Shown piece by piece: positions 2,010-59,154 of a stretch of 64,000 nt of DNA (its first letter is position 1; each line of letters begins with the position of its first letter). The notes beneath the pieces were generated by a model. The model ran no database searches and had not been told where the DNA came from. It was given only the letters and a program-made list of their open reading frames with translations. Position numbers and translations under genes: made by a program. The stretch spans positions 143,490-207,489 of IMG/VR virus record IMGVR_UViG_3300042544_001590. One strand, 5' to 3'.

Positions 2010-2115
2010 AAAAGGTATCCACTTGTTTCATGGTGATTGCTTGGAAGTCCTCAAAAAGATTCCAAGCAATTTTTGTAATGATCACCAATCGCTATTAAGA
2101 TTATCTTTCGGGTAA
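1999..2115 (+). pseudogene. N-terminal stub of an N4/N6 DNA methyltransferase
   Basis: ATG overlapping the uvsX end reads MQIEKGIHLFHGDCLEVLKKIPSN, the typical start of beta-class MTases, then runs into the 3' end of the opposite-strand Mom gene. Confidence 0.7.
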
Positions 2116-2726
2116 GGCATTGGTTTGTGTTTCAATTCACTTATTATTCTTTTACGGTCTTTTTTATGTAGAATGTAAACGTATCTATGTTTTTTCTTTA
2201 TTTTGACCCTTTCATAATTGGGATCAATTTTAAGCAATTCTTCGCGTTTAATCGTGTTATATACAACACAAACACTTCTTTGATTTGTGAGTTTTCCATT
2301 TATTCTATGTAAATAACCTTGTCCAAGCGAAAGGTTATTACCTTGATATATCCAATTCGTTGCTTGATAAATAGTTCCTAAATGATTCGCCATTGGATCG
2401 GAATAACTGACCAAAACTTTTATATTGGTATTTTTTCTCAACCAATCAAAGGTTTTGCCTATGAAATAGCTTTCACTATTTTTAGGTGCTTCATCAACAA
2501 GCCACAATCTTTTCAGTTCCAAAACATCTTTATTCTCTAAATTGGGGGTAATGGATTTAACAGTTTGTCTGCCAACGGGAAACCCATACACGGCAACACC
2601 GATCAAATTATCCTCATCAAATAATCCCAATGAATACCTAGAAGGAGTCCAACTGTGGGAATAGTGGTTTTCCTTTATTAACTTTTTCGCCAAGTTTGTA
2701 TCTATTAAATCAATCGTGTAATTCAT
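2082..2726 (-). CDS. Mom-like DNA adenine modification enzyme (GNAT fold)
   Basis: HYS, LIGVAVYG.P, LELKRL, KNSES, VSYSDP..H.GTIYQATNW motifs of the Mom family. Confidence 0.8.
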   Translation of the reverse strand: MNYTIDLIDTNLAKKLIKENHYSHSWTPSRYSLGLFDEDNLIGVAVYGFPVGRQTVKSITPNLENKDVLELKRLWLVDEAPKNSESYFIGKTFDWLRKNTNIKVLVSYSDPMANHLGTIYQATNWIYQGNNLSLGQGYLHRINGKLTNQRSVCVVYNTIKREELLKIDPNYERVKIKKKHRYVYILHKKDRKRIISELKHKPMPYPKDNLNSDW

Positions 2727-2737
2727 GATTCAATTTA

Positions 2738-4387
2738 TCACTCATTCAAAAACAACCAATGAGCATAATTTATGGGTTTTTTAAATCCACGATCTCTATA
2801 CTCTCCGATGTTGTTGAGATGTCTGTCTTTATTGACCTGTTCGGTCATGTAACCCATGACACCTTCTTCATCTTCGGGATTATCTTTTTTGAGTTTGATT
2901 AGATATTTGGATATGGCATCAATTTTTTCATAATCTGGATCATCATCATCCATCATTTCTCTTAATTTTTCTTCAATTTCTGGTGCCGACAATCCAGCAA
3001 CTTCACCTTCAATATTAATCTTCGGTTTCTTTACACCCTTTTCCTTTAATTTTTTTTCAGCTTCCCATTTCTTACCTCGTTTTTCATATTCTCCTTGACG
3101 AATCATTCTCGCGTCTTCTCTAGATTGAGCTTTTTCAGCCTTTTCATCATCTCTTGAAGATTTACTCACTATTGATAGTTTAAGTTTCGATAGAATATTT
3201 CTCCAGTTTGATAATATTCCACTTTCTTCGTCAGTTATAATCCCCTCATTAACCAAATCATCCAGAAGACCATCATCCAAAGTATCATATACAGATTGAT
3301 ATCTGTCTTTCTTGAGTAGCATTTCCGCTTCGTTTTGGTATGAAGAAGTCTTTAAATTTCTTTTATAATATTTTAAAACCACTCCACCCGCATTACCCAT
3401 AACATTAATTATAAATTTTTGAATTTTTTCATCGGTGATGTCTTGATTAGATTCAATACGAGCCTCAATATTTCTCAGTACTTCATTAAATGTTGCTTGG
3501 GGGGTATTCTTCAACAAGTCTCTTTCATATTTGATGTTTTCTTGAGTGTCTAAACCCACACCTCTCATCTCTTCATCATTATCTTTATTCAAATTTGCAA
3601 TTTGTTGTTTATATGAAATCAACTGTTTTAGAGTATCCCTAAATATAGTAAGGGGAGTGTTGTTATCAACATCGAGTTCTGGTTGAACGAAATTTGTATC
3701 GGCATGATAGATAGACGAAGTTATACCTTTTGGTAATTTTTTAGATTTTTTAAGTTTTTGAATTATTGAACGGGCTTTATTTTGAATAATATAAGCCTCT
3801 TCCATACTCATACCAAACATTTCTTCTTTTTTTGCTGTTGTTCCATATGCGAAATTGGAGCTTCCTCTTTTTTGGAAGTGCTTATCAGCATAATCATAAA
3901 TATTTTTTTGATTTAATAATTTTTTTGCAAATTGCTGGGACAACGCAATTTCTGGATACGCTTTCACTATCAATCTCAACATAAATTCTTGTTGTAATTG
4001 TGTATTATCTGCATTTTTTGGAGCAAATTTAGCATATTCGGGTGTATATGCTCTTGTTTTTCTACTTCCTATTCTTTCTTCCGGCGTGAGTGGTCTGATT
4101 GCTAAATCTTGAACACTTTGGTCAAACCCAACACTTTTATTAATTCCAATCTTTGCAAGATTCTCCGCAGATAAAAAATTGAATAAAGATTTGGTCACGT
4201 ATTCCAACCTTCTATGTCCGAGAGTTGGGCTAGGTGGTGCTTTTGGGTGTCCTTTCATTATTCCCTGCACCTGTAAATATAAATTTTCAAAGTCTGGAAA
4301 TTCATTTCTCCAAAAGGGACTAAATCGAGCCATTTCGTTCAATACCTGCACTTTTTCCACTAGATAATCAAAGCCGTAATTTCTCAT
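2738..4387 (-). CDS. hypothetical protein, putative internal head/ejected protein
   Basis: 549 aa; TAAATA-N5-ATG upstream; N-terminus FDYLVEKVQVLNE. Confidence 0.6.
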   Translation of the reverse strand: MRNYGFDYLVEKVQVLNEMARFSPFWRNEFPDFENLYLQVQGIMKGHPKAPPSPTLGHRRLEYVTKSLFNFLSAENLAKIGINKSVGFDQSVQDLAIRPLTPEERIGSRKTRAYTPEYAKFAPKNADNTQLQQEFMLRLIVKAYPEIALSQQFAKKLLNQKNIYDYADKHFQKRGSSNFAYGTTAKKEEMFGMSMEEAYIIQNKARSIIQKLKKSKKLPKGITSSIYHADTNFVQPELDVDNNTPLTIFRDTLKQLISYKQQIANLNKDNDEEMRGVGLDTQENIKYERDLLKNTPQATFNEVLRNIEARIESNQDITDEKIQKFIINVMGNAGGVVLKYYKRNLKTSSYQNEAEMLLKKDRYQSVYDTLDDGLLDDLVNEGIITDEESGILSNWRNILSKLKLSIVSKSSRDDEKAEKAQSREDARMIRQGEYEKRGKKWEAEKKLKEKGVKKPKINIEGEVAGLSAPEIEEKLREMMDDDDPDYEKIDAISKYLIKLKKDNPEDEEGVMGYMTEQVNKDRHLNNIGEYRDRGFKKPINYAHWLFLNE

Positions 4388-4392
4388 ACTGT

Positions 4393-4415
4393 TATTTAGT
4401 CATAATAATTAAATA
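4393..4415. promoter_or_regulatory. back-to-back T4-type late promoters
   Basis: TATTTA 4393-4398 and TAAATA 4410-4415, each 5 nt from an ATG. Confidence 0.75.
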
Positions 4416-4420
4416 ATGTT

Positions 4421-5152
4421 ATGATTTCATTCTCACAATACTTTCTAATCAAAGAAGCGTTTGATACTGTCACCGAATTCATGTTAAATCCTGAAAATTC
4501 AGATAAGGATTATGATGAACTTATTGCAGAATTCGAGGCATCAGGTGGGGAGGTCATCGGTTCCGGTTCGTTTGGTATCGTGTATTCCCATCCTAAGTGG
4601 CCGTATGTTCTAAAGGTTTTCTCTTGGGATGATCCTTACTTAAAATTCGCTAGATATGCTCACGATAATCCTCATCCATCTTTTCCCAAATTCTTCGGCA
4701 AACCACAAAGAGTAGTCCCCCAATTCACACGATACAAGGACGAAGCAAAACAATATTTGGCTAGAATTGAAAGGCTTAATCCGACTCCTGTTAATGTTTT
4801 GGGACTAATAGATAATAATCTGATGCTTTATTTTCATTTGAAAGAAAATCCTAAATTAATACAAGATAGGACACAATTCATGAAATTGTCTTCCAAAGTT
4901 AAATCTTTACCAAAAGCTGTTTATAATCTGTTGGAAGGATGGTATCTGCTCCGCAGAGATTTACCTGATCTGAATCCCGATTTACACGGAGATAATGTGA
5001 TGATGCGAGATGATGGTCAATATGTTTGGGTTGATCCGGTCTGGACAGGAGATGAGAATATTGATAATCCTCTGACTGCCGCTATGACATCCAAGGATTA
5101 CGAACCTAGTAACATGCTTAAAGGAGGGAGAACAAAGTTGACTTCCCGATAA
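4421..5152 (+). CDS. protein kinase-like enzyme
   Basis: Gly loop GSGSFGIVY, VLKV lysine, catalytic loop DLHGDNVM, VWVDP. Confidence 0.8.
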   Translation: MISFSQYFLIKEAFDTVTEFMLNPENSDKDYDELIAEFEASGGEVIGSGSFGIVYSHPKWPYVLKVFSWDDPYLKFARYAHDNPHPSFPKFFGKPQRVVPQFTRYKDEAKQYLARIERLNPTPVNVLGLIDNNLMLYFHLKENPKLIQDRTQFMKLSSKVKSLPKAVYNLLEGWYLLRRDLPDLNPDLHGDNVMMRDDGQYVWVDPVWTGDENIDNPLTAAMTSKDYEPSNMLKGGRTKLTSR

Positions 5153-5171: not shown

Positions 5172-5852
5172 ATGGAAAATACTAACGTCTCGTCCAACAT
5201 CGCCATTTTTACGGCAACAAAAGGTAATAACGGACAATTCCCATTAGCCCAAACAGCGTTGAAATTGAATCTGGATGAATTTATTCACCCAAAATTCAAC
5301 AATCGCCAAGGATTACCCAAGGTTTACAACGAATTCCTAGACTTGGCTATTAGGGAGAAATTTGAATACGTCATGTTCATCCACGATGATGTCCATCTGG
5401 AACACGATCCCCGCCCAAAGCTGGAGAAGCTGTTTCAGGAATACGATATCGTAGGTGTGGCAGGATGTTCCAAAGCAGAAATAGAGTCCCCCGCACTTTG
5501 GCACATCATGGGTGGGGGGTTTGGAGGTGGCTTTCTACATGGTGCGGTAGCTCACGGCAACGCTGATAGGAAGCACATGACGAGCTTTGGTGTATATCCC
5601 CATCGCGTGGTGATGATTGATGGTGTTTTCATGGCATTTAATCGGAAAGCGATTGAAACGGTGAGATTTGACGAGGCTTGCCCATCAAGCTTTCATTTTT
5701 ACGATCTTTGCATGTGTGCTTCAGCTTTAGAAAGAGGCTTGAAAATTGGGGTGGGGGATGTTATGATAACTCACGAGTCACCGGGATTGCGAGAATTTAC
5801 AGAGGATTGGAAAGCTGGGGAGTCTTACTACCTAAACAAATATGGAAAATAA
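5172..5852 (+). CDS. GT-A fold (GT2-like) glycosyltransferase
   Basis: YN, FIHDDV (DxD-like), IVGVAG, IDGVFMA, FDE, FHFYDL, H.SPG. Confidence 0.8.
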   Translation: MENTNVSSNIAIFTATKGNNGQFPLAQTALKLNLDEFIHPKFNNRQGLPKVYNEFLDLAIREKFEYVMFIHDDVHLEHDPRPKLEKLFQEYDIVGVAGCSKAEIESPALWHIMGGGFGGGFLHGAVAHGNADRKHMTSFGVYPHRVVMIDGVFMAFNRKAIETVRFDEACPSSFHFYDLCMCASALERGLKIGVGDVMITHESPGLREFTEDWKAGESYYLNKYGK

Positions 5853-6222: not shown

Positions 6223-6431
6223 GTGAAAAATTTGAAGAACCGGAATGGTCGAAGGAAGCATCGAAAGAATTTTCTAAAGAATATTGTGAAAAAGTTGACA
6301 AGTCATTTGTAGAAGCCATTAATCATTATTACAATATTCTCGGAGAAACTGATAAAATTGACATCAAAAGGTGTTTACAACAGTGTATAGATAATACCAC
6401 CAAGAGTTACGGATTTAAAGTGAATGAGTGA
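6219..6431 (+). CDS. hypothetical protein
   Basis: ATGA coupling at 6219. Confidence 0.5.
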   Translation: MSEKFEEPEWSKEASKEFSKEYCEKVDKSFVEAINHYYNILGETDKIDIKRCLQQCIDNTTKSYGFKVNE

Positions 6432-7764: not shown

Positions 7765-8262
7765 ATGAATAATTATTTCAAAGAATTGGGTTTAATTTAT
7801 GAAAATATTTTATTAGAGGCAAATTTATCAAATAAAAATCTTTTTTATGGCTTAAAAAGTATGCTGGATGGTGGAGATGATTTTGTATTGTTGACTGATA
7901 GAAACATCGACACGGACAACCAACAAACTATGAGTTGTCAATTTATTTATAAAGGAACTAGACATATTAAAGTTTTCACAGGAGCATTTTTTGAAAATAA
8001 AAATTATAATAATGTTTCACATATTACTGTTACTATATTTGAAGTAACCCCAGAGGGTAAAACAATATCTAAATTGGATACTAATGTATTCTATAATAAA
8101 GGTGGACACCTTGATCTTTCACACGATCCAGTAATATCTACGGTTGAGAATTTTGTAAAATATGTAAAATCAGTATTGGATAGGTCTGATAGGGATGGTG
8201 ATGATGAAATATTACCACCGAAATCTCCAAGCCCGATGAGTAAAAAATTGTTATCAGTTTGA
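7765..8262 (+). CDS. hypothetical protein, putative internal head protein
   Basis: AT-rich ORF with late promoter; N-terminus LIYENILLE-A. Confidence 0.6.
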   Translation: MNNYFKELGLIYENILLEANLSNKNLFYGLKSMLDGGDDFVLLTDRNIDTDNQQTMSCQFIYKGTRHIKVFTGAFFENKNYNNVSHITVTIFEVTPEGKTISKLDTNVFYNKGGHLDLSHDPVISTVENFVKYVKSVLDRSDRDGDDEILPPKSPSPMSKKLLSV

Positions 8263-14190: not shown

Positions 14191-14790
14191 ATGCGTCCGT
14201 TTTACGATTTTTATCTAGAGAAATTTTCTGATTTGGGTAAATTATCCCCCGAACAATTGAGAAAAGGTCAGAGACTTGATCCAAACAACCCCGATAACTT
14301 CCAACAGGTGAGCGGGAGGGTGTTTTCTCAAGCCCTTACCAACATCACAAAGAATGATGAATTTCGCCGAACGGTAAATCCAAAGTTTTTCAAGAATATC
14401 AAGAACAATCTCAGTGTTTATAAAGTTGAAGAATATCAGCGCATGAAATGTTTCCTTGGAAAGAACAATTCCAGTGGTTTTGCCATCAAGGATGGGGATG
14501 AATTGGTGTCAGTATTCTCTTCTCAAGAATCTTCTGGTAATGCGCTGGTTCAGGAAGCGATTCGGCAAGGTGCCACACGATTGGATTGTTTTGCCACACA
14601 AGATGAAAACGGTAATATCAAGGATGAGGGTTTATACAGGCTTTATAGTAGGAATGGGTTTGTGATTGACAAAACGCTGAACATGGACGGAGAATATCCT
14701 GTCAAGAATGGGATATCCTACTTCGTGGACGAAAATGGAAATGTTGATCCCACCAATCCTACCGTGGTGATCTTCATGGTTAAAAACTAG
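14191..14790 (+). CDS. GNAT-like domain protein, putative internal head protein
   Basis: ELVSVFS...GNALVQEAIRQGATRLDCF...LYSRNGF; TAAATA (14180)-N5-ATG. Confidence 0.55.
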   Translation: MRPFYDFYLEKFSDLGKLSPEQLRKGQRLDPNNPDNFQQVSGRVFSQALTNITKNDEFRRTVNPKFFKNIKNNLSVYKVEEYQRMKCFLGKNNSSGFAIKDGDELVSVFSSQESSGNALVQEAIRQGATRLDCFATQDENGNIKDEGLYRLYSRNGFVIDKTLNMDGEYPVKNGISYFVDENGNVDPTNPTVVIFMVKN

Positions 14791-37138: not shown

Positions 37139-38419
37139 ATGGAATTTGATAAGCTGTATCGTGAATTGATGTTGGAGTTCTCGGAAGGAGCGATCCGTAA
37201 CATTGTGAAGAAATTCCAAAACGATGCCACGGAACAAGAAATCCGTAGAGAGGTTCAGGATTTTGAAAAGTATAAGAACGCTTTACAAAAGAAAGACCCT
37301 TTCCAATATAAATCGTGGATAGAGTTCACGGAAGCGATCCATGCTGCAAAGGGTAAGGCTGAATTTAAAAGGAAAAAAGCACCAACCCAAGATGTTGTTG
37401 CCAATCAGGATGATATCATAGCCGATGATGAGAACGTGACCATCTATCGGGGAGATTCCCAAGACAAGTGCGTGTTATATGGAAAGGGTTATTCTTTCTG
37501 TATCTCAAGACAGGTTGGAGGTAATATGTTCTCTAACTATCGTTTGGGTAAAGAATCTACATTCTATTTCATATATTTCAAGAAGAAACCGAAGAGTGCG
37601 GTTGACCATATTATGGTGTTGGATCATACCAAGCATGGGTATGAATGGACTTTTGCCGATAATGATACTAAAAAGGTGAATGGTGGGTGGGATGAGGTGG
37701 TGGGTAAATATCCAGAATTAAAGAAATATGAAAAATTATTAGTTAATAAAAAGTTGGATGATGAAGAGAGTGAATTTATAAAAGTGTTAAAGAATTTTTC
37801 TAAAAATCCAAGATTAGAAAATTTTAATAAATTCTCTTATGAACAAAAAGCACAAGCTCTTAAAAGTGTTGTTGATTTAAGTGATCAAATATGGAACGCT
37901 TTAGATTCTACTTTGAGAAATGAATTTTTGAGCATAGGTCCAAATTTAACAAAACATCAAGCATTTAATCTTAAACCTAATGAAATTGAACGGTATAAAA
38001 AAACAAGAAATCTTTCCAGACAACATTTAATTGATGATTATAAATATAAGGAAAATATATTTGATTTTTCAGATGATGAAAGATTGGCATTGGAGTATAT
38101 GGAAAAAGTTGGAAGTTCAAAATTTTTCAAAGATGATAGATTATCTAATAAAAAATTAAAGTTTGAAACATCTAATGATTATGAAAGGTCTATTTATGAC
38201 TTGGTTTTTGATGAAAACGGTGCATTAGTGACATATCAAAATATTGTAAGAGATGTTTTTGGGGGGAATCCAGATGATGTTTTATACATAAAGTATGATA
38301 CGAATGGAAATATTATTAATATTGAATCAAGCTATGATGATATTGAAGATACTTCAAATTATAATGAATCTATCCATTTTGATAAATATTATCAAAAGAT
38401 AATGTCAAGTCTCTTTTAA
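37139..38419 (+). CDS. hypothetical protein, putative internal head protein
   Basis: MEFDKLYRELMLE; lies antisense between gp25 and gp6. Confidence 0.6.
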   Translation: MEFDKLYRELMLEFSEGAIRNIVKKFQNDATEQEIRREVQDFEKYKNALQKKDPFQYKSWIEFTEAIHAAKGKAEFKRKKAPTQDVVANQDDIIADDENVTIYRGDSQDKCVLYGKGYSFCISRQVGGNMFSNYRLGKESTFYFIYFKKKPKSAVDHIMVLDHTKHGYEWTFADNDTKKVNGGWDEVVGKYPELKKYEKLLVNKKLDDEESEFIKVLKNFSKNPRLENFNKFSYEQKAQALKSVVDLSDQIWNALDSTLRNEFLSIGPNLTKHQAFNLKPNEIERYKKTRNLSRQHLIDDYKYKENIFDFSDDERLALEYMEKVGSSKFFKDDRLSNKKLKFETSNDYERSIYDLVFDENGALVTYQNIVRDVFGGNPDDVLYIKYDTNGNIINIESSYDDIEDTSNYNESIHFDKYYQKIMSSLF

Positions 38420-38901: not shown

Positions 38902-40740
38902 TTACCAATTCTTGCAGCTTTCGGCTTTGGGGGTTCCGGGTTTCGCTTTATCGCAACCATGTCTTGCTCGAAATGCTTTCTTTCTATCAGTGTTTCCACT
39001 ATCACCAGTTGCTTTCACACCTTTTTGTCCAAAATGGATTCTTTTATAACCCGAACCATCGGGGTCTTTTACACATTTAGTATATTTTTTACCCTTACGA
39101 TCACTGGATGCTTTTTGAGTAACTTTGGTGCATTTCTTGGATTTTTCTAAGAACACGGCAACTTCCTGAAGATCAATCATGAAGTCGTTGATATCAACAT
39201 TGAAAGATGATGCGTATTTGTTTGCCAATTCATCAAAGGATTCGTTCACCGTTCCTTCATCTCTCATTCCTTGCACGGTGGACAACAATTGCGTTGCACT
39301 GTTAGCACCACTTCTGGTTATAGACCAAAATCCCTTGAGTCGTGAATTGATAATATCCTTGGATGTTTTATTAAATGGTAAATTCTTGACAAGTTTCTTT
39401 AATTCTGGGATGGCGGCATTCCATTGATCCTTTGACTTGATTTCTTCCAATTTCTTGATGAACTCTTCCATTGCCATATAACGGGGATCAACATCCAAAT
39501 TCTCCAAAGGAATGGTTTTTCTTTCCATACCTCGACCCGCAATGGAATTGAAGAATTTTTGTAATGATTGTGCTGGAAGTTCTCCGACTCTCCGCATCAC
39601 TCCAATGTTTATGTTGCGATTCAATGTGCGGGGATCAAAATTTTCCAATCCTCTATCGAATCGATTTACATGATAATCAATAAATGAAAATATGGGATTA
39701 TCATCAGTTGTTAATTTTTTCAATAATCCCAATTTATAAAGAAAATCTGTTTTATTAACATTTAAAAAATCAACCCCGGTGGGTATTTCACTATCTGATA
39801 TTCCATGCTCTATTTTTAACATATCCAATATCCCTGCTGCTTTGTTGTTGATTAAACTTTTCACCTTCGCCAATACAGTATCATTGGATTTCATATTGTT
39901 GGATGTTTTTGTTTCTATTTTTGAATTTATTTCTTCAAATCGTTCATCCGCAGCGTTTGAAGCCTTTATAGCATTTATCAATTTTTTTTCAGCATCTTCT
40001 AATTTACTTTGAACGGAAGATAATTTTTTAACATCTTGTAAAAGAATAGATAATTCTATCTCCGCTTGCTGGATTTGACCGCTTAGGGTTTCCTTTTTTT
40101 CTTTAATCCTAGTATTCTTTTTTTCGGTTTTTTTTCTTTGGATAAAGGATTTGATTTGATCGATTCTATCACTACCATATAAAGAACTATCAAGAATTTC
40201 TTTGAGTCTATTCACTTCGTCTCTCGCATCCGAAGCTTGTCCCGCTCTTTTTTGTTGAGAGACGAGAGCATTATTCCACTCTTTTTCATTATCATCATTT
40301 ATAGTATCTATTCTTAATCCTCCTACCAGTTTAATTTTACCATCTATATCTTCTTTCTTTTCACCGCTGTATATTTTTTTAAAATCTTCAAAGAATGTTT
40401 TGGAATTGAATAGGATTGCAAAAGCATTAGCCATTTCTCTATCTCGCGCAGCTTTCAATTCATAGGTATCCTGTTGACTAACACCTTTGGAGGTGTCATA
40501 AAGATATTTTTTCATCTGATCTATTGGTTTTTGCTTTTCAAAATTGTCAACTTTGCCAACAGGACTGGACGAATAACCAGAGGAAGTTGATGCTCCAGCA
40601 ACTCCCCCATCGGCTGTAATACCAGCTTGTTGCCCACTGATATTCTGTGGTCCTATATTTCGTTGCGCCCTAAAATACGCATCTCCCCCGCGAGTTCCCT
40701 TTGCTTCCAGCGCCAAATTATATAAATCATCAAAGTTCAT
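38902..40740 (-). CDS. coiled-coil protein with basic C-terminal domain, putative internal head protein
   Basis: MNFDDLYNLALE-A; C-terminal IHFGQ...RKKAFRARH.C. Confidence 0.6.
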   Translation of the reverse strand: MNFDDLYNLALEAKGTRGGDAYFRAQRNIGPQNISGQQAGITADGGVAGASTSSGYSSSPVGKVDNFEKQKPIDQMKKYLYDTSKGVSQQDTYELKAARDREMANAFAILFNSKTFFEDFKKIYSGEKKEDIDGKIKLVGGLRIDTINDDNEKEWNNALVSQQKRAGQASDARDEVNRLKEILDSSLYGSDRIDQIKSFIQRKKTEKKNTRIKEKKETLSGQIQQAEIELSILLQDVKKLSSVQSKLEDAEKKLINAIKASNAADERFEEINSKIETKTSNNMKSNDTVLAKVKSLINNKAAGILDMLKIEHGISDSEIPTGVDFLNVNKTDFLYKLGLLKKLTTDDNPIFSFIDYHVNRFDRGLENFDPRTLNRNINIGVMRRVGELPAQSLQKFFNSIAGRGMERKTIPLENLDVDPRYMAMEEFIKKLEEIKSKDQWNAAIPELKKLVKNLPFNKTSKDIINSRLKGFWSITRSGANSATQLLSTVQGMRDEGTVNESFDELANKYASSFNVDINDFMIDLQEVAVFLEKSKKCTKVTQKASSDRKGKKYTKCVKDPDGSGYKRIHFGQKGVKATGDSGNTDRKKAFRARHGCDKAKPGTPKAESCKNW

Positions 40741-49393: not shown

Positions 49394-50191
49394 ATGAAGT
49401 CCTTTCTGGAATTTTTTGAAGAGCGTAACGGTGTTCTATTGGAATACCGTCACAGGGATGGTTTTGGGGGTATTAAACAATCCCTCCATGCCAACAACAA
49501 AAAAGGGGGCAACATCACCCGTGATCCTCTGACACGCAAGATACCATGGAACAAAGGACCGTATAAGAAAATCAGAACAGCGGGAGAGATTCTGATCGGA
49601 GATGATCTGTTGAAAGAATTGGGTTCTATGGGAGGCGTGGAGTTCAAGGATGGTAAGGAGATCAAAAGAAAAAATAGTAATCAAATTTTAAAATTGTTCA
49701 CAAATCTTCATGGACAACAATGTGGAAAAATAGTGGAGGTAAAAAACCGAAACGCTTTTACTGAAAAAACAGATTATTATGGTAATTGTGTTGATCTGTG
49801 TAATCAATTTACTGTCGATACTGATGAAGATGATTATGACGGTGATTATGAAAATTATTATGAAGATGATGGTAGCGGCGCAGCAGAATGGATGATCAAC
49901 GTTTTATCAAATGATAATAATGTTATTAGGTTAAACAAAGAAACCTTTGATCAGTATGTAGACATTTCAGGTATCCCACAAGACAGAATTGAAAATTTAT
50001 CAAGTGATGAGTATTATTATATTATAGATGGTAGAGGACACCCTAACGGATATGTTAATTTTGTTTTATATGGTGAGAATAGGAATGGTGATGATATACA
50101 TTATTTTTTCAATGTATCACCTGATCCTAATTTAGAAAATAAAAAATTGCCGAAATTGCCAAATGGATATGGGGCAGGTTCTAATATGTGA
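49394..50191 (+). CDS. hypothetical protein, putative internal head protein
   Basis: TAAGTA-N5-ATG; MKSFLEFFEE. Confidence 0.6.
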   Translation: MKSFLEFFEERNGVLLEYRHRDGFGGIKQSLHANNKKGGNITRDPLTRKIPWNKGPYKKIRTAGEILIGDDLLKELGSMGGVEFKDGKEIKRKNSNQILKLFTNLHGQQCGKIVEVKNRNAFTEKTDYYGNCVDLCNQFTVDTDEDDYDGDYENYYEDDGSGAAEWMINVLSNDNNVIRLNKETFDQYVDISGIPQDRIENLSSDEYYYIIDGRGHPNGYVNFVLYGENRNGDDIHYFFNVSPDPNLENKKLPKLPNGYGAGSNM

Positions 50192-57327: not shown

Positions 57328-59154
57328 ATGAATGGGCTTATTGAAGATAACAACACTAAAGAGTATATTTTAAATCGTAAAAATAATGGAATGCCCTTAT
57401 CGAAATCTTTATTTAAAAGAAAATTTCAAAGTATCTTAAATGAAATAAATGATCATAATAACAAATACCTCTTAAAAAATGATAAATTTTCACAAGAAGT
57501 GTATAATTGGATATTTGATATTAAAGAAAATCCAAAATGTCCGCTAACTGGATTGGATTTAAAATTTGATTATCATAAATTTAAATACAGACCAGTTAGA
57601 GGGAAAGGCAAACATTTACCAGACGTTCAACAAATTATAACAAGCAAAAGATTGAAAAATTTTAGTTATAAGAAGTTGTATGAGTCTAAAAGAAATGTTG
57701 AGCCAGTTGAAATATCATTTGAAAAAATAAGAAAATTATTAAATAAAAATTTCAAAAATATTACTAATTTTGGGGGGTTTACCACCAAATTCTTATCAAG
57801 ATTTCCAGAATATTATAATTATGTGGATTCGGATCAATTTTTACCATGGTGTGAATCCTTTCAGGAAAAAATATATTGTATTATCAACAATATTCCAGAA
57901 TCAATAGGTAAAAAATACATGGGATTTGGAAAGGGATATTCCAAATATGCTGATTGGGTGGAGTATCGTAGAAGTAAAGCTGCCAAAAAAATGAATGCTG
58001 CCGTAGATTACGACAAAGATAAGACCATATTAGAACTTAATAAAAGAATCGAAGAGTTAAAATTAGCCAATAAAGCAACCAATAATTTACGACAATCTTT
58101 TATGGGAACCGATCCAAATTTAGTTAGAAGTATTTTTACCCATACCTCAGAGTATCCAGATATAAAATTCAGCAATAGGGTATTTTTATTACTCAATGGG
58201 CAACCAGTTCCAGATAAAGGTTATATAAAACCAGTATTTTTCAGTTTGGATAAAGGATATAGTATGAGATTTTCATCTCAAAATGGAACTTCCAAACCGG
58301 AACAAGAATTATTTGATTGGTTGGGGGGATACATACCAAATCTAAAAAAAGATAGAACGGTGTTAAATGGTAGAGAAATAGATGTATTTTCTGAAGAGAA
58401 TGGTGTAGGAATTGAATATGATGGTGTATATTGGCATAATTATGAAATAGTGGGTGATAAATCATTATTTTTGAAAAATCAATTGGCGAAATCAAAAAAC
58501 ATAAGATTATTACACATTTTTGAAACTGAATGGCTACAAAAACAGGATATTGTTAAGAGTATTATTCTTTCTAAATTTAATATTTTTGAAAATAAATATC
58601 ATGCTAGAAAATGTGATATTAGAACGGTTGATAGTAAAATTTGTGTTGATTTTTTAAACGAAAATCATTTACAAGGTAAAGATAATTCAAAATATAAATA
58701 TGGACTCTATCATAAGGATGAGTTGGTTTCGGTGATGACGTTTGGGCAACGAACCATTACGAAAAATCCACAAATGGAATTGATTAGATTTTGCAATAAA
58801 AAAAATACTACAGTTATTGGAGGTGCTGGTAAATTATTCAAACATTTCATTAAAACGCATAATCCAACATATGTTAAGACATACGCAAACGCCAGAATAA
58901 GTGATGGTGATATGTATAAAAAATTAGGATTCTCTTTCAAACACCACTCACCCCCAAATTATTGGTATTATAAACCAGAAGCAGCCAAAAAGATCAAATT
59001 GATGCATCGAAGTGGTTTTCAAAAACATAGGCTGTCTGGGATTCTTGAAAGATTTGACAAGGGTAAAACGGAATGGGAAAACATGAGCGATCATGGATAT
59101 AAGAAAATCTACGACTGTGGCAACCTTGTTTTTGAATATCAAAGAGAAAATTGA
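57328..59154 (+). mobile_element. Hef-like putative homing endonuclease with C-terminal GNAT/Mom-like domain
   Basis: S..E, EID, IEYDG.YWH, HIFE.EW nuclease motifs; then NHLQG, ELIRF, GGA.KL, Y..LGF, IYDCG; AT-rich; between sheath and tube. Confidence 0.7.

What the first reader, a model, noticed from the sequence alone, without database searches (positions are those of the whole stretch)
4421..5152. Late-expressed protein kinase with a putative packaging signal
Seen: intact kinase motifs (GSGSFG, VLK, DLHGDN, DP), a late promoter and the MISFSQYFLIKE-A N-terminus. Known: the T7 gp0.7 kinase is an early gene acting on host proteins. Inference: this kinase is made late, packaged and injected to phosphorylate host or defence proteins before phage gene expression starts.
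Basis: partly seen in the sequence, partly recalled or inferred. Interest (0 to 1): 0.65.

Follow-up and report, generated by a model that had tools for sequence, protein, structure and literature searches.

The report
Late-made T7-type kinase with head-targeting tag
A freshwater T4-like phage encodes a small T7-type protein kinase behind a late promoter, with an N-terminal tag like the one T4 uses to load proteins into its head, so the enzyme is probably delivered ready-made with the DNA, though only sequence evidence supports this so far.

Summary
Window 4421-5152 (+) is an intact 243-aa ORF with the stated motifs. In 14 metagenomic homologues the kinase catalytic residues are invariant (G47, G49, K65, D187, N192, D205).

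It is a minimal homologue of the T7 gp0.7 kinase (T7K). It has the T7K hallmark DPV motif and lacks the T7 shut-off domain.

The "late promoter" is real but is not T4's TATAAATA. It is [C/T]TAAATA exactly 12 nt before the ATG. About 50 genes share it, including portal, scaffold, baseplate, terminase, sheath and tube. It is conserved before the kinase in three relatives, and it implies leaderless mRNA.

The N-terminus is not unique to the kinase. Seven otherwise unrelated proteins of this 207-kb phage start M-x-S/P-F-x-x-F/Y-F/Y, against 0.16 expected by chance. This matches the residues that matter in the T4 capsid targeting sequence MKTYQEFIAE (aromatic at 4 and 7, hydrophobic-x-Glu cleavage site). 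The phage also has gp21-type prohead protease, scaffold and gp55 homologues.

Packaging, injection and substrates remain inference. I put packaging at about 0.5-0.6. Verdict: a new variant of two known kinds (T7K kinases; CTS-loaded internal proteins), of moderately high interest.

The parts
4409..4415 (+). Late-promoter core TTAAATA, 12 nt before the kinase ATG with a 5-nt spacer. Predicts a leaderless kinase mRNA.
   Evidence: Same motif and spacing before about 50 genes, including portal, scaffold, gp6, terminase, sheath and tube. Conserved before the kinase in L016, L017 and L018. [quoted passage not shown] A gp55 homologue is present.
4393..4399 (-). Late-promoter core CTAAATA of the divergent 549-aa gene, back to back with the kinase promoter in a 33-bp intergenic region.
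   Evidence: The divergent pair is conserved in relatives.
4421..4456 (+). Codons 1-12, MISFSQYFLIKE: putative capsid-targeting propeptide ending in an I-K-E|A prohead-protease site.
   Evidence: Tag shared by 7 of 353 proteins against 0.16 expected, with no homology beyond the tag. Ser3 uses both TCN and AGY codons. F4 is nearly invariant and E12 invariant in homologues. T4 IPII/IPIII begin MKTYQEFIAE|A. T4 CTS residues 4 and 7 target, 8 and 10 direct processing (PMC9026906). pLDDT is below 50 for residues 1-16.
4484..5053 (+). Kinase core, residues 22-211: N-lobe, helical insert, catalytic loop and DPV motif. There is no activation segment and no alphaF-alphaI subdomain.
   Evidence: hhalign to T7 gp0.7 residues 35-218. 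AF2 model pLDDT is mostly 80-96 here. All top Foldseek and VIA hits are protein kinases.
4559..4576 (+). Glycine-rich loop GSGSFG (residues 47-52).
   Evidence: G47 and G49 invariant.
4613..4615 (+). Beta3 lysine K65 (VLK).
   Evidence: Invariant. Aligns with the T7K VIKV motif.
4979..4996 (+). Catalytic loop DLHGDN (D187, N192).
   Evidence: D187 and N192 invariant. Aligns with T7K DMHSGN.
5033..5041 (+). DPV motif (D205-P206-V207), the T7K-family substitute for DFG.
   Evidence: D205 and P206 invariant. DPV is described as the T7K hallmark in PMC13645617.
5054..5152 (+). Low-confidence C-terminal tail (residues 212-243) with a conserved ML-x-GG-R motif, then the stop codon. No T7-type shut-off domain.
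   Evidence: pLDDT below 50. G235 and G236 conserved.
2738..4387 (-). Divergent late gene, a 549-aa charged protein of unknown function that shares the promoter region with the kinase.
   Evidence: No Pfam, PHROG or NCBIfam match. Orthologue with its own late motif in relatives.
14191..14790 (+). Another tagged late protein (MRPFYDFYLE...).
49394..50191 (+). Another tagged protein (MKSFLEFFEE...) behind a TTAAGTA variant motif at -12. The tag is invariant in 12 homologues and their C-terminal modules vary.

Best explanation
The gene encodes a minimal Ser/Thr protein kinase of the T7 gp0.7 (T7K) family, in a 207-kb freshwater T4-like myovirus.

Shown or well supported:
- It has a kinase fold, T7K homology and a complete catalytic set including the DPV motif.
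- Its only recognisable promoter is the phage's late class.
- Its first 12 residues are a tag shared with six unrelated proteins of the same phage.

Inferred mechanism:
- The gp55-type late machinery transcribes it as a leaderless mRNA.
- The N-terminal tag (aromatic at positions 4 and 7/8) docks the protein onto the prohead scaffolding core, as the T4 capsid targeting sequence does.
- The gp21-type prohead protease cuts after I-K-E12.
- The mature kinase of about 231 aa stays in the head with the DNA and is ejected into the next host.
- There it phosphorylates host proteins, plausibly including defence proteins as T7K does, before any phage gene is expressed.

T7 gets its kinase to work early by placing the gene first on the entering DNA. 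This phage would reach the same end by pre-loading the protein.
For: Kinase identity:
- hhalign of the family alignment against T7 gp0.7: probability 95.5%, E 1.4e-8, 161 columns.
- PHROG 15752 (T7 kinase): E 1.5e-7.
- Precomputed PF27024 Phage_T7_kinase on a homologue, and on the nearest Atlas clusters.
- Foldseek and VIA-align top hits are all protein kinases.
- Catalytic residues and DP are invariant.

Late class:
- The motif sits at a fixed -12 before about 50 genes, including the structural genes, and is conserved in three relatives.
- The separate early motif, at a fixed -22, marks about 80 small genes and is absent before the kinase.
- A gp55 homologue is present. The Aeh1 late promoter is a precedent.

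Tag:
- 7 of 353 proteins carry it, binomial p about 5e-10.
- The tagged proteins have unrelated bodies.
- Selection acts at the protein level, shown by mixed Ser codons.
- A second tagged family keeps the tag invariant and at the extreme N-terminus, even with insertions after it.
- The same DNA pattern finds ipI, ipII and ipIII in T4.

Machinery: gp21 homologue with catalytic motifs and an IAE9 site like T4's LIE9; scaffold and gp23 homologues.
Against: - There are no virion, cleavage or activity data. The phage is uncultured and no RNA runs hold it.
- The late motif also precedes genes unlikely to be virion parts, such as homing-endonuclease-like genes and a CCA-adding enzyme. Late does not mean packaged.
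- Conservation continues past the proposed cut (F14, D15, T16), so the N-terminal region may also have a role in the mature protein.
- The kinase tag is two residues longer than the T4 CTS.
- The tag pattern was defined after seeing the data, so its p-value is optimistic.
- I could not locate the gp23 maturation site: there is no Glu at the T4-equivalent position. The protease's specificity in this phage is therefore assumed.
- The gene sits beside a glycosyltransferase in all four phages examined.
Confidence: 0.5

Rival explanations
1. It is a late-acting cytoplasmic kinase that is not packaged. It is made late to modify host or phage proteins late in infection, for example to blunt abortive-infection systems triggered by capsid, portal or terminase proteins, or to tune assembly or lysis. 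The shared N-terminal motif serves another purpose, such as localisation to assembly sites, stability, or efficient translation of leaderless mRNAs.
For: The late motif also precedes non-virion genes. Conservation extends beyond the putative cut site. There is no physical evidence of packaging.
Against: The tag matches the T4 CTS at exactly the positions mapped for targeting and processing. It is kept at the extreme N-terminus of unrelated proteins. A translation-signal role is unlikely because Ser3 uses non-interconvertible codon families. Also, most late genes lack the tag.
Confidence: 0.25
2. It is a small-molecule (sugar) kinase feeding the adjacent glycosyltransferase, as part of a DNA or glycan modification pathway. 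This would resemble the kinase-fold arabinose kinase domains in the RB69 and DLP3 DNA hypermodification clusters, which also lie next to uvsX.
For: A Glyco_tranf_2_5 gene follows the kinase and stays nearby in three relatives. A Mom-like modification gene lies 1.7 kb upstream. Kinase-fold sugar kinases in such clusters are documented (PMC13326640). RB69 keeps its cluster beside uvsX.
Against: The profile comparison to the RB69 gp52 kinase domain gives 3.4% probability over 22 columns, against 95.5% over 161 columns for T7K. Structural neighbours are all protein kinases, not APH or choline-kinase types. In two relatives other genes separate kinase and glycosyltransferase, one of them with its own late promoter. 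A metabolic enzyme has no evident need for the shared tag.
Confidence: 0.1
3. It is expressed both early or middle and late, as the T4 ip genes are. Newly made kinase then does the early work and packaging is incidental or absent.
For: Downstream replication genes (helicase at 6424) must be expressed before late times, so unrecognised promoters exist in this block. Middle promoters were not defined here.
Against: The kinase is the first gene after a divergent junction with only 33 bp upstream, and that space is filled by two late motifs. There is no early-class motif. Sigma-70-like sites are no more frequent than in shuffles.
Confidence: 0.1

Closest known systems
T7 gp0.7 protein kinase (T7K) and its Autographiviridae homologues, including JSS1_004
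   Same: Homologous kinase domain with the same motifs (G-x-G-x-F, YSHP...V-x-K-V, D-x-H-x-x-N, DPV) and the same truncated architecture ending just after the DFG-equivalent. T7K phosphorylates host proteins broadly and disarms defence systems (PMC13645617).
   Different: No C-terminal shut-off/DNA-binding domain. It lies in a T4-like myovirus, not a podovirus. It has a late-class promoter instead of being the first early gene. It carries an N-terminal tag that T7K lacks. Identity is only about 29% over the aligned columns.
T4 internal proteins IPI, IPII, IPIII and Alt (capsid targeting sequence system)
   Same: A short N-terminal propeptide with an aromatic residue at positions 4 and 7 and a hydrophobic-x-Glu site followed by Ala, shared by unrelated proteins of one phage. 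Late expression. A gp21-type protease and a scaffold core are present. Alt sets the precedent for an injected protein-modifying enzyme.
   Different: The cargo is a kinase, which has not been reported for this system. The tag consensus is M-x-S-F-x-x-F/Y-F rather than MKTYQEF. The kinase tag is 12 residues, not 10. The tagged genes are scattered, not in an IP locus. Nothing has been shown physically.
T7K homologues of jumbophages (Salmonella phage Munch, Escherichia phage G17)
   Same: Diverged T7K-like kinases in large myoviruses that have lost the shut-off domain. Their function is stated as unknown (PMC13645617).
   Different: In those homologues the DPV valine is reported as poorly conserved. 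Here DPV is largely kept. No tag or expression class has been described for them, and I did not examine them.
Kinase domains of polyvalent proteins (Iyer et al. 2017)
   Same: Ser/Thr/Tyr-kinase-superfamily domains that have lost the C-terminal subdomain but keep the active site. They are predicted to be delivered with phage or plasmid DNA to modify host proteins, and stand-alone versions exist (PMC5512222).
   Different: Those are mostly parts of giant multidomain proteins in Verrucomicrobia, Chlamydia and Bacteroidetes elements. They have an insert between the catalytic His and Asp. Any relationship to this family was not tested.

Membership tests
T7 gp0.7-like protein kinase (PF27024 / PHROG 15752 / PHROG 2828) | [quoted passage not shown] | tested here: met
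   hhalign probability 95.5%, E 1.4e-8, residues 22-211 against T7 35-218. PHROG 15752 E 1.5e-7, partial match. PF27024 (weak) on homologue P0011. Atlas neighbours carry PF27024. The local Pfam copy gave no hit for this protein itself.
T7 gp0.7-like protein kinase (PF27024 / PHROG 15752 / PHROG 2828) | Complete catalytic set with DPV in place of DFG | tested here: met
   G47, G49, K65, D187, N192, D205 and P206 are invariant. V207 is present in most members. The DPV hallmark is described in PMC13645617.
T7 gp0.7-like protein kinase (PF27024 / PHROG 15752 / PHROG 2828) | C-terminal shut-off/DNA-binding domain after the kinase domain (Autographiviridae architecture) | tested here: not met
   The protein ends 36 residues after DPV with a low-confidence tail. 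The reported jumbophage and prophage homologues have also lost this domain.
T7 gp0.7-like protein kinase (PF27024 / PHROG 15752 / PHROG 2828) | Early (class I) expression | tested here: not met
   Only the late-class motif lies upstream. No early-class motif is present.
T7 gp0.7-like protein kinase (PF27024 / PHROG 15752 / PHROG 2828) | Promiscuous Ser/Thr phosphorylation of host proteins | not testable with these tools
   Needs enzyme assays or phosphoproteomics. The Ser depletion of early-class proteins is only a weak, non-specific hint.
T4-type CTS-loaded internal head proteins | N-terminal propeptide of about 10 residues with targeting residues at positions 4 and 7 | tested here: met
   F4 and Y7 in the kinase. 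F4 and F/Y7 in all seven tagged proteins. T4 CTS verified from the T4 record. Positional roles taken from PMC9026906.
T4-type CTS-loaded internal head proteins | L/I-x-E cleavage motif closing the propeptide | tested here: met
   I10-K11-E12|A13. E12 is invariant in the homologues that retain an N-terminus, and the P3 residue is I, L or F in them.
T4-type CTS-loaded internal head proteins | gp21-type prohead protease and scaffold core encoded by the phage | tested here: met
   Peptidase_S77 hit, E 5.7e-27. 28% identity to T4 gp21, with the ELNHP and G-x-S-x-R motifs kept. A gp22-like scaffold gene lies next to it, and gp23 is present.
T4-type CTS-loaded internal head proteins | Same tag on several unrelated proteins of the phage | tested here: met
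   Seven proteins carry it. All pairwise BLASTP E-values beyond residue 20 exceed 0.2.
T4-type CTS-loaded internal head proteins | Physical presence in the virion, processing, and ejection with the DNA | not testable with these tools
   The phage is uncultured and known only from lake metagenomes.
Kinase-fold sugar kinases of phage DNA hypermodification clusters (RB69 gp52:53 CTD type) | Sequence-profile similarity to the RB69 kinase domain | tested here: not met
   hhalign probability 3.4%, with 22 columns around the catalytic loop only.

The most novel reading that the evidence does not exclude
This T4-like phage pre-loads its head with a kit of at least seven tag-addressed proteins and ejects them with the DNA. 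The kit would include:
- a T7K-type, possibly hyperpromiscuous, kinase
- a retropepsin-like 'Zn_protease' domain protein
- a protein with a conserved N-domain and interchangeable C-terminal cassettes
- perhaps a CCA-adding enzyme

The kinase would then be a ready-made, broad anti-defence weapon acting from the first second of infection. The tag would be a portable address label, recognisable across a deep branch of T4-like viruses.
Probability: 0.35. Interest if true: 0.8.

Novelty: new variant of a known kind. Interest (0 to 1): 0.6.

Why it matters
T7K was recently shown to disarm many bacterial defences by mass phosphorylation. Its diverged homologues in large phages have no known role (PMC13645617).

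A T7K-type kinase that is made late and carried in the capsid would be a second, independent way for a phage to have the kinase active at the very start of infection. It would add a kinase to the short list of injected protein-modifying enzymes, of which T4 Alt is the classic case.

The shared tag also gives a sequence rule for predicting which proteins uncultured T4-like phages eject. It may also offer a handle for loading foreign proteins into such capsids.

Tried and rejected
- **Canonical T4 late promoter:** TATAAATA is not enriched and precedes only 3 genes. It was replaced by the [C/T]TAAATA-at-minus-12 class.
- **Family libraries on the kinase itself:** Pfam gave nothing and NCBIfam only noise.
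- **Cultured phages:** megablast of the region and tblastn of the kinase against 50,697 phage records found no match. The major capsid protein is only about 33% identical to cyanophage gp23, so no cultured relative is available.
- **Solved structures by sequence:** only sub-threshold B-Raf hits.
- **Motif as a ribosome-binding signal:** rejected. Two distinct, rigidly spaced motif classes split early small genes from structural genes, and Shine-Dalgarno-like sequences are rare overall.
- **Tag as a nucleotide-level signal:** rejected on codon usage.
- **Tagged proteins as paralogues:** rejected.
- **Sugar-kinase homology:** rejected at the profile level.
- **gp23 maturation site:** the attempt to locate it, in order to infer protease specificity, failed. 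There is no Glu at the T4-equivalent position.
- **Sigma-70 and terminator scan around the gene:** uninformative.
- **Sequencing runs:** only DNA runs kept as contigs hold the stretch, and none is on record as RNA. Read laying was therefore not used, because contigs cannot show transcript starts.
- **Big representative search:** not used, because the family was settled by cheaper means.
- **Complex prediction:** not used. The CTS receptor is not known even in T4, so a result would not have moved my odds.
- **Other:** no alternative genetic code was needed.

Full report
**What is there.** Window 4421-5152 (+) is an intact ORF of 243 codons ending in TAA. The protein begins MISFSQYFLIKE followed by A.

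The window is the last 64 kb of a 207,489-bp virus record with direct terminal repeats, rated complete. The record is a distant T4-like myovirus. It has:
- UvsX, a gp41-like helicase, gp32, gp61, gp6, terminase and sheath
- a gp21-type prohead protease (Peptidase_S77, E 5.7e-27; 28% identical to T4 gp21 with the catalytic His and Ser motifs kept)
- gp23, only about 33% identical to its nearest cultured relatives, the cyanophage gp23 proteins
- a gp55 late sigma homologue

Near-identical DNA occurs in lake and freshwater metagenomes from many studies. No run that holds the stretch is on record as RNA.

**Is it a kinase, and which kind?** The local Pfam copy gave nothing for this protein. PHROGs gave a partial hit to the T7 gp0.7 kinase family (E 1.5e-7).

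The word-index search found 14 homologues, all metagenomic. In their alignment G47, G49, K65, D187, N192, D205 and P206 are invariant. The D-to-N and N-to-D spacings are the canonical 5 and 13.

An AlphaFold2 model built on this alignment is confident for residues about 20-211. It is unconfident for residues 1-16 and 212-243. Foldseek and the Foldseek-independent VIA-align search both returned only protein kinases: MEK1, BMPR2, PknB, PKR and others. The scores were middling (TM about 0.35, Z up to 7.9), as expected for a stripped-down domain.

The decisive result is a profile comparison with T7 gp0.7 itself. It gave probability 95.5%, E 1.4e-8 and 161 aligned columns, matching residues 22-211 to T7 residues 35-218. 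The comparison lines up the G-loop, the YSHP...V-x-K-V block, the catalytic loop (D-x-H-x-x-N) and the DPV motif. Two further results agree:
- A homologue carries a precomputed weak hit to PF27024, Phage_T7_kinase.
- The nearest ESM Atlas clusters are viral and carry the same family.

A 2026 study names DPV as the hallmark of T7K homologues. It reports diverged homologues in jumbophages and prophages that have lost the shut-off domain, and says their function is unknown (PMC13645617). This protein fits that description. It ends 36 residues after DPV and has no activation segment and no C-terminal helical subdomain.

**The promoter.** T4's TATAAATA is not enriched in this genome. Unbiased k-mer enrichment in upstream regions found two motif classes.

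The first class is [C/T]TAAATA starting exactly 12 nt (rarely 13) before the ATG. It precedes about 50 genes. These include:
- portal
- scaffold
- the small core protein
- prohead protease
- a baseplate wedge protein
- large terminase
- tail sheath
- the gene at the tail-tube position just after the sheath gene

The kinase has TTAAATA at 4409-4415. Its divergent neighbour has CTAAATA on the other strand, and the two motifs fill a 33-bp intergenic region. [quoted passage not shown] Applied here, that geometry puts the start at the A of the ATG, giving leaderless mRNAs.

The second class is TTAAAAACTAG(G/A)ATACAAT at a fixed -22. It marks about 80 small genes concentrated at genome positions 44-67 kb, which looks like an early region. 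It is absent before the kinase.

Shine-Dalgarno-like sequences are rare in all classes: 2% of late-class, 6% of early-class and 18% of other genes.

The late motif, its spacing and the divergent arrangement are conserved before the kinase in three relatives at 55-86% protein identity. I therefore accept "late promoter", with two caveats:
- The assignment rests on association, not on RNA data.
- The same motif also precedes genes that are unlikely to be virion parts.

**The N-terminus.** Among 353 candidate proteins, seven begin M-x-[S/T/P]-[F/Y]-x-x-[F/Y]-[F/Y/L/I]. The frequency of this pattern inside proteins predicts 0.16 such N-termini (binomial p about 5e-10). That p-value is optimistic, because I defined the pattern after seeing the data.

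| Position | N-terminus | Note |
|---|---|---|
| window 4421 | MISFSQYF... | the kinase |
| genome 75474 | MISFYEYF...ILIE\|AFDP | 366 aa |
| genome 68113 | MQSFLEFFEE | |
| genome 126453 | MRSFKQFFVE | Zn_protease domain; the Pfam match starts at residue 14 |
| genome 6535 | MESFSTFFE | |
| window 14191 | MRPFYDFYLE | |
| window 49394 | MKSFLEFFEE | |

Several results bear on what the tag is:
- Beyond residue 20 the seven proteins share no detectable similarity.
- Ser3 is encoded by both TCN and AGY codons, so selection acts on the protein and not on the RNA.
- Four of the seven have their own late motif. A fifth has the TTAAGTA variant at -12. One follows a gene that has the late motif further upstream (-27); for the last (genome 126453) I found no clear promoter motif.
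- I read the T4 internal proteins from the T4 record. IPII and IPIII begin MKTYQEFIAE|A, and IPI begins MKTFKEF...ITE|A.
- Published mutagenesis places capsid targeting mainly at CTS residues 4 and 7, and processing at residues 8 and 10. gp21 cuts after L/I-x-E (PMC9026906). These are exactly the positions conserved in this phage's tag.
- The kinase offers I10-K11-E12|A13. E12 is invariant in the homologues that keep an N-terminus, and F4 nearly so.
- A DNA version of the pattern, run on T4 as a control, hits the starts of ipI, ipII and ipIII.
- In a second tagged family (window 49394), M1, S3, F4, E6 and F8 are invariant across 13 sequences. The tag stays at the extreme N-terminus even where 30-120 residues have been inserted after it. 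The C-terminal halves are unrelated modules. That is how an address label behaves.

**Mechanism and its status.** Shown or well supported:
- T7K-family kinase with an intact active site
- late-class promoter only
- a shared N-terminal tag
- T4-type head maturation machinery in the phage

Inferred:
- The tag docks the kinase on the scaffolding core.
- The protease removes residues 1-12.
- The mature enzyme is ejected with the DNA.
- It phosphorylates host proteins at once, by analogy with T7K and with T4 Alt, an injected ADP-ribosyltransferase.

I put packaging at about 0.5-0.6 and the whole chain at about 0.5.

Early-class proteins are poorer in serine than late-class and other proteins (medians 4.4%, 6.8% and 5.7%). 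This echoes the Ser/Thr/Tyr depletion reported for early proteins of T7K-bearing phages. It could equally be a general compositional difference, so I give it little weight.

**Rivals.**
1. A late-acting kinase that is not packaged, with the tag serving another role. This is the main alternative (0.25).
2. A sugar kinase working with the adjacent glycosyltransferase. Kinase-fold sugar kinases do exist in the RB69 and DLP3 DNA modification clusters next to uvsX (PMC13326640), and the glycosyltransferase stays near the kinase in relatives. However, the profile match to the RB69 kinase domain is 3.4% over 22 columns, against 95.5% over 161 columns for T7K. All structural neighbours are protein kinases. 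In two relatives other genes intervene between kinase and glycosyltransferase (0.1).
3. Additional early or middle expression from promoters I could not recognise (0.1).

**Comparison with what is known, and novelty.**
- It works like T7K and belongs to that family by sequence and active site. It fails two features of the T7 archetype, the shut-off domain and early expression.
- It resembles the T4 CTS-loaded proteins in every feature that sequence can test. Physical membership of that class is untested.
- Polyvalent-protein kinases (PMC5512222) are a conceptual precedent for delivered, C-terminally truncated kinases. I did not test any relationship to them.
- I found no report of a CTS-tagged or virion-borne T7K homologue. 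The paper library is incomplete, so this is weak evidence of absence.

I rate it a new variant of a known kind.

**Limits.** The first three are explained under Tried and rejected.

Noticed in passing
Whole genome G000; in the window e.g. 14806, 18698, 20145 and 21292 (early class) and about 25 late-class starts: Both promoter classes sit at rigid distances from the ATG: early TTAAAAACTAG(G/A)ATACAAT at -22, late [C/T]TAAATA at -12. Shine-Dalgarno-like sequences are rare. This suggests the phage makes mostly leaderless mRNAs in both phases, which is unusual for a T4-like phage.
   Followed up: partly
Window 49394-50191 (+) and homologues P0019-P0032: This tagged protein has a conserved N-domain of about 105 aa ending in EIKE|S, followed by at least three unrelated C-terminal modules across homologues. 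That is a cassette-like, polymorphic architecture reminiscent of polymorphic toxins or polyvalent proteins. Two homologues have insertions right after the tag.
   Followed up: partly
Genome 76607-78133 (+), outside the window (locus L008): A CCA-adding enzyme/poly(A) polymerase with an HD domain sits behind a late motif. It has an N-terminal extension of about 50 residues beginning MIRFHKLY, and is divergently paired with the tagged 366-aa protein at 75474-76574. It may be a packaged tRNA-repair enzyme.
   Followed up: no
Genome 126453-126911 (-), locus L005: A 152-aa protein with the PF05618 'Zn_protease' (retropepsin-like) domain carries the tag MRSFKQFFVE as a 13-residue extension ahead of the domain.
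   Followed up: no
Window 7765-8262, 37139-38419 and 38902-40740; genome 67712, 70944, 138126: A second recurrent N-terminal motif, roughly [L/I/M]-Y-x-[E/Q/D/N]-[I/M/L/V] within the first 15 residues, occurs almost only in late-motif genes (6 of 7 hits). Hydrophobic-x-Glu within residues 6-12 is about twice as frequent in late-class proteins (35% against 17%, p 0.007).
   Followed up: partly
Kinase homologues P0013 and P0014 (alignment A1): Two diverged kinase homologues end in acidic tails finishing ...DEVPF and ...DDYPF. From memory, these resemble the C-terminal tip of bacterial SSB, hinting at recruitment to SSB-binding proteins. Three others (P0010-P0012) carry a C-terminal extension of about 120 aa of unknown fold.
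   Followed up: no
T4 record NC_000866, 18966-19130 (-), gene 61.1: The 54-aa hypothetical protein gp61.1 of T4 begins MKTFKEF, encoded by the same 21 nucleotides as the start of internal protein IPI.
   Followed up: no
Whole genome: Early-class proteins are depleted in serine (median 4.4%) compared with late-class (6.8%) and other proteins (5.7%). Thr and Tyr do not differ. This parallels the depletion reported for T7K-bearing phages, but no control with kinase-free phages was run.
   Followed up: partly
Window 2082-2726 (-) and 57328-59154 (+): A Mom-like DNA modification protein lies next to UvsX. A 608-aa HNH/homing-endonuclease-like protein with a Mom-like region lies between the sheath gene and the gene at the tail-tube position. 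With the glycosyltransferase at 5172-5852, this suggests modified DNA.
   Followed up: no
Genome 88887-90572, 103757-105208 and 105236-106012 (outside the window): Homing-endonuclease-like genes flank the major capsid gene. Two of them carry the TTAAGTA variant of the late motif.
   Followed up: no
Window 2738-4387 (-) compared with L016, L017 and L018: In relatives, a 141-143-aa late gene (MIEDLQTIYDEILEE...) sits between the kinase and the 513-557-aa late gene. In this phage it is missing, so the large gene abuts the kinase promoter directly.
   Followed up: no
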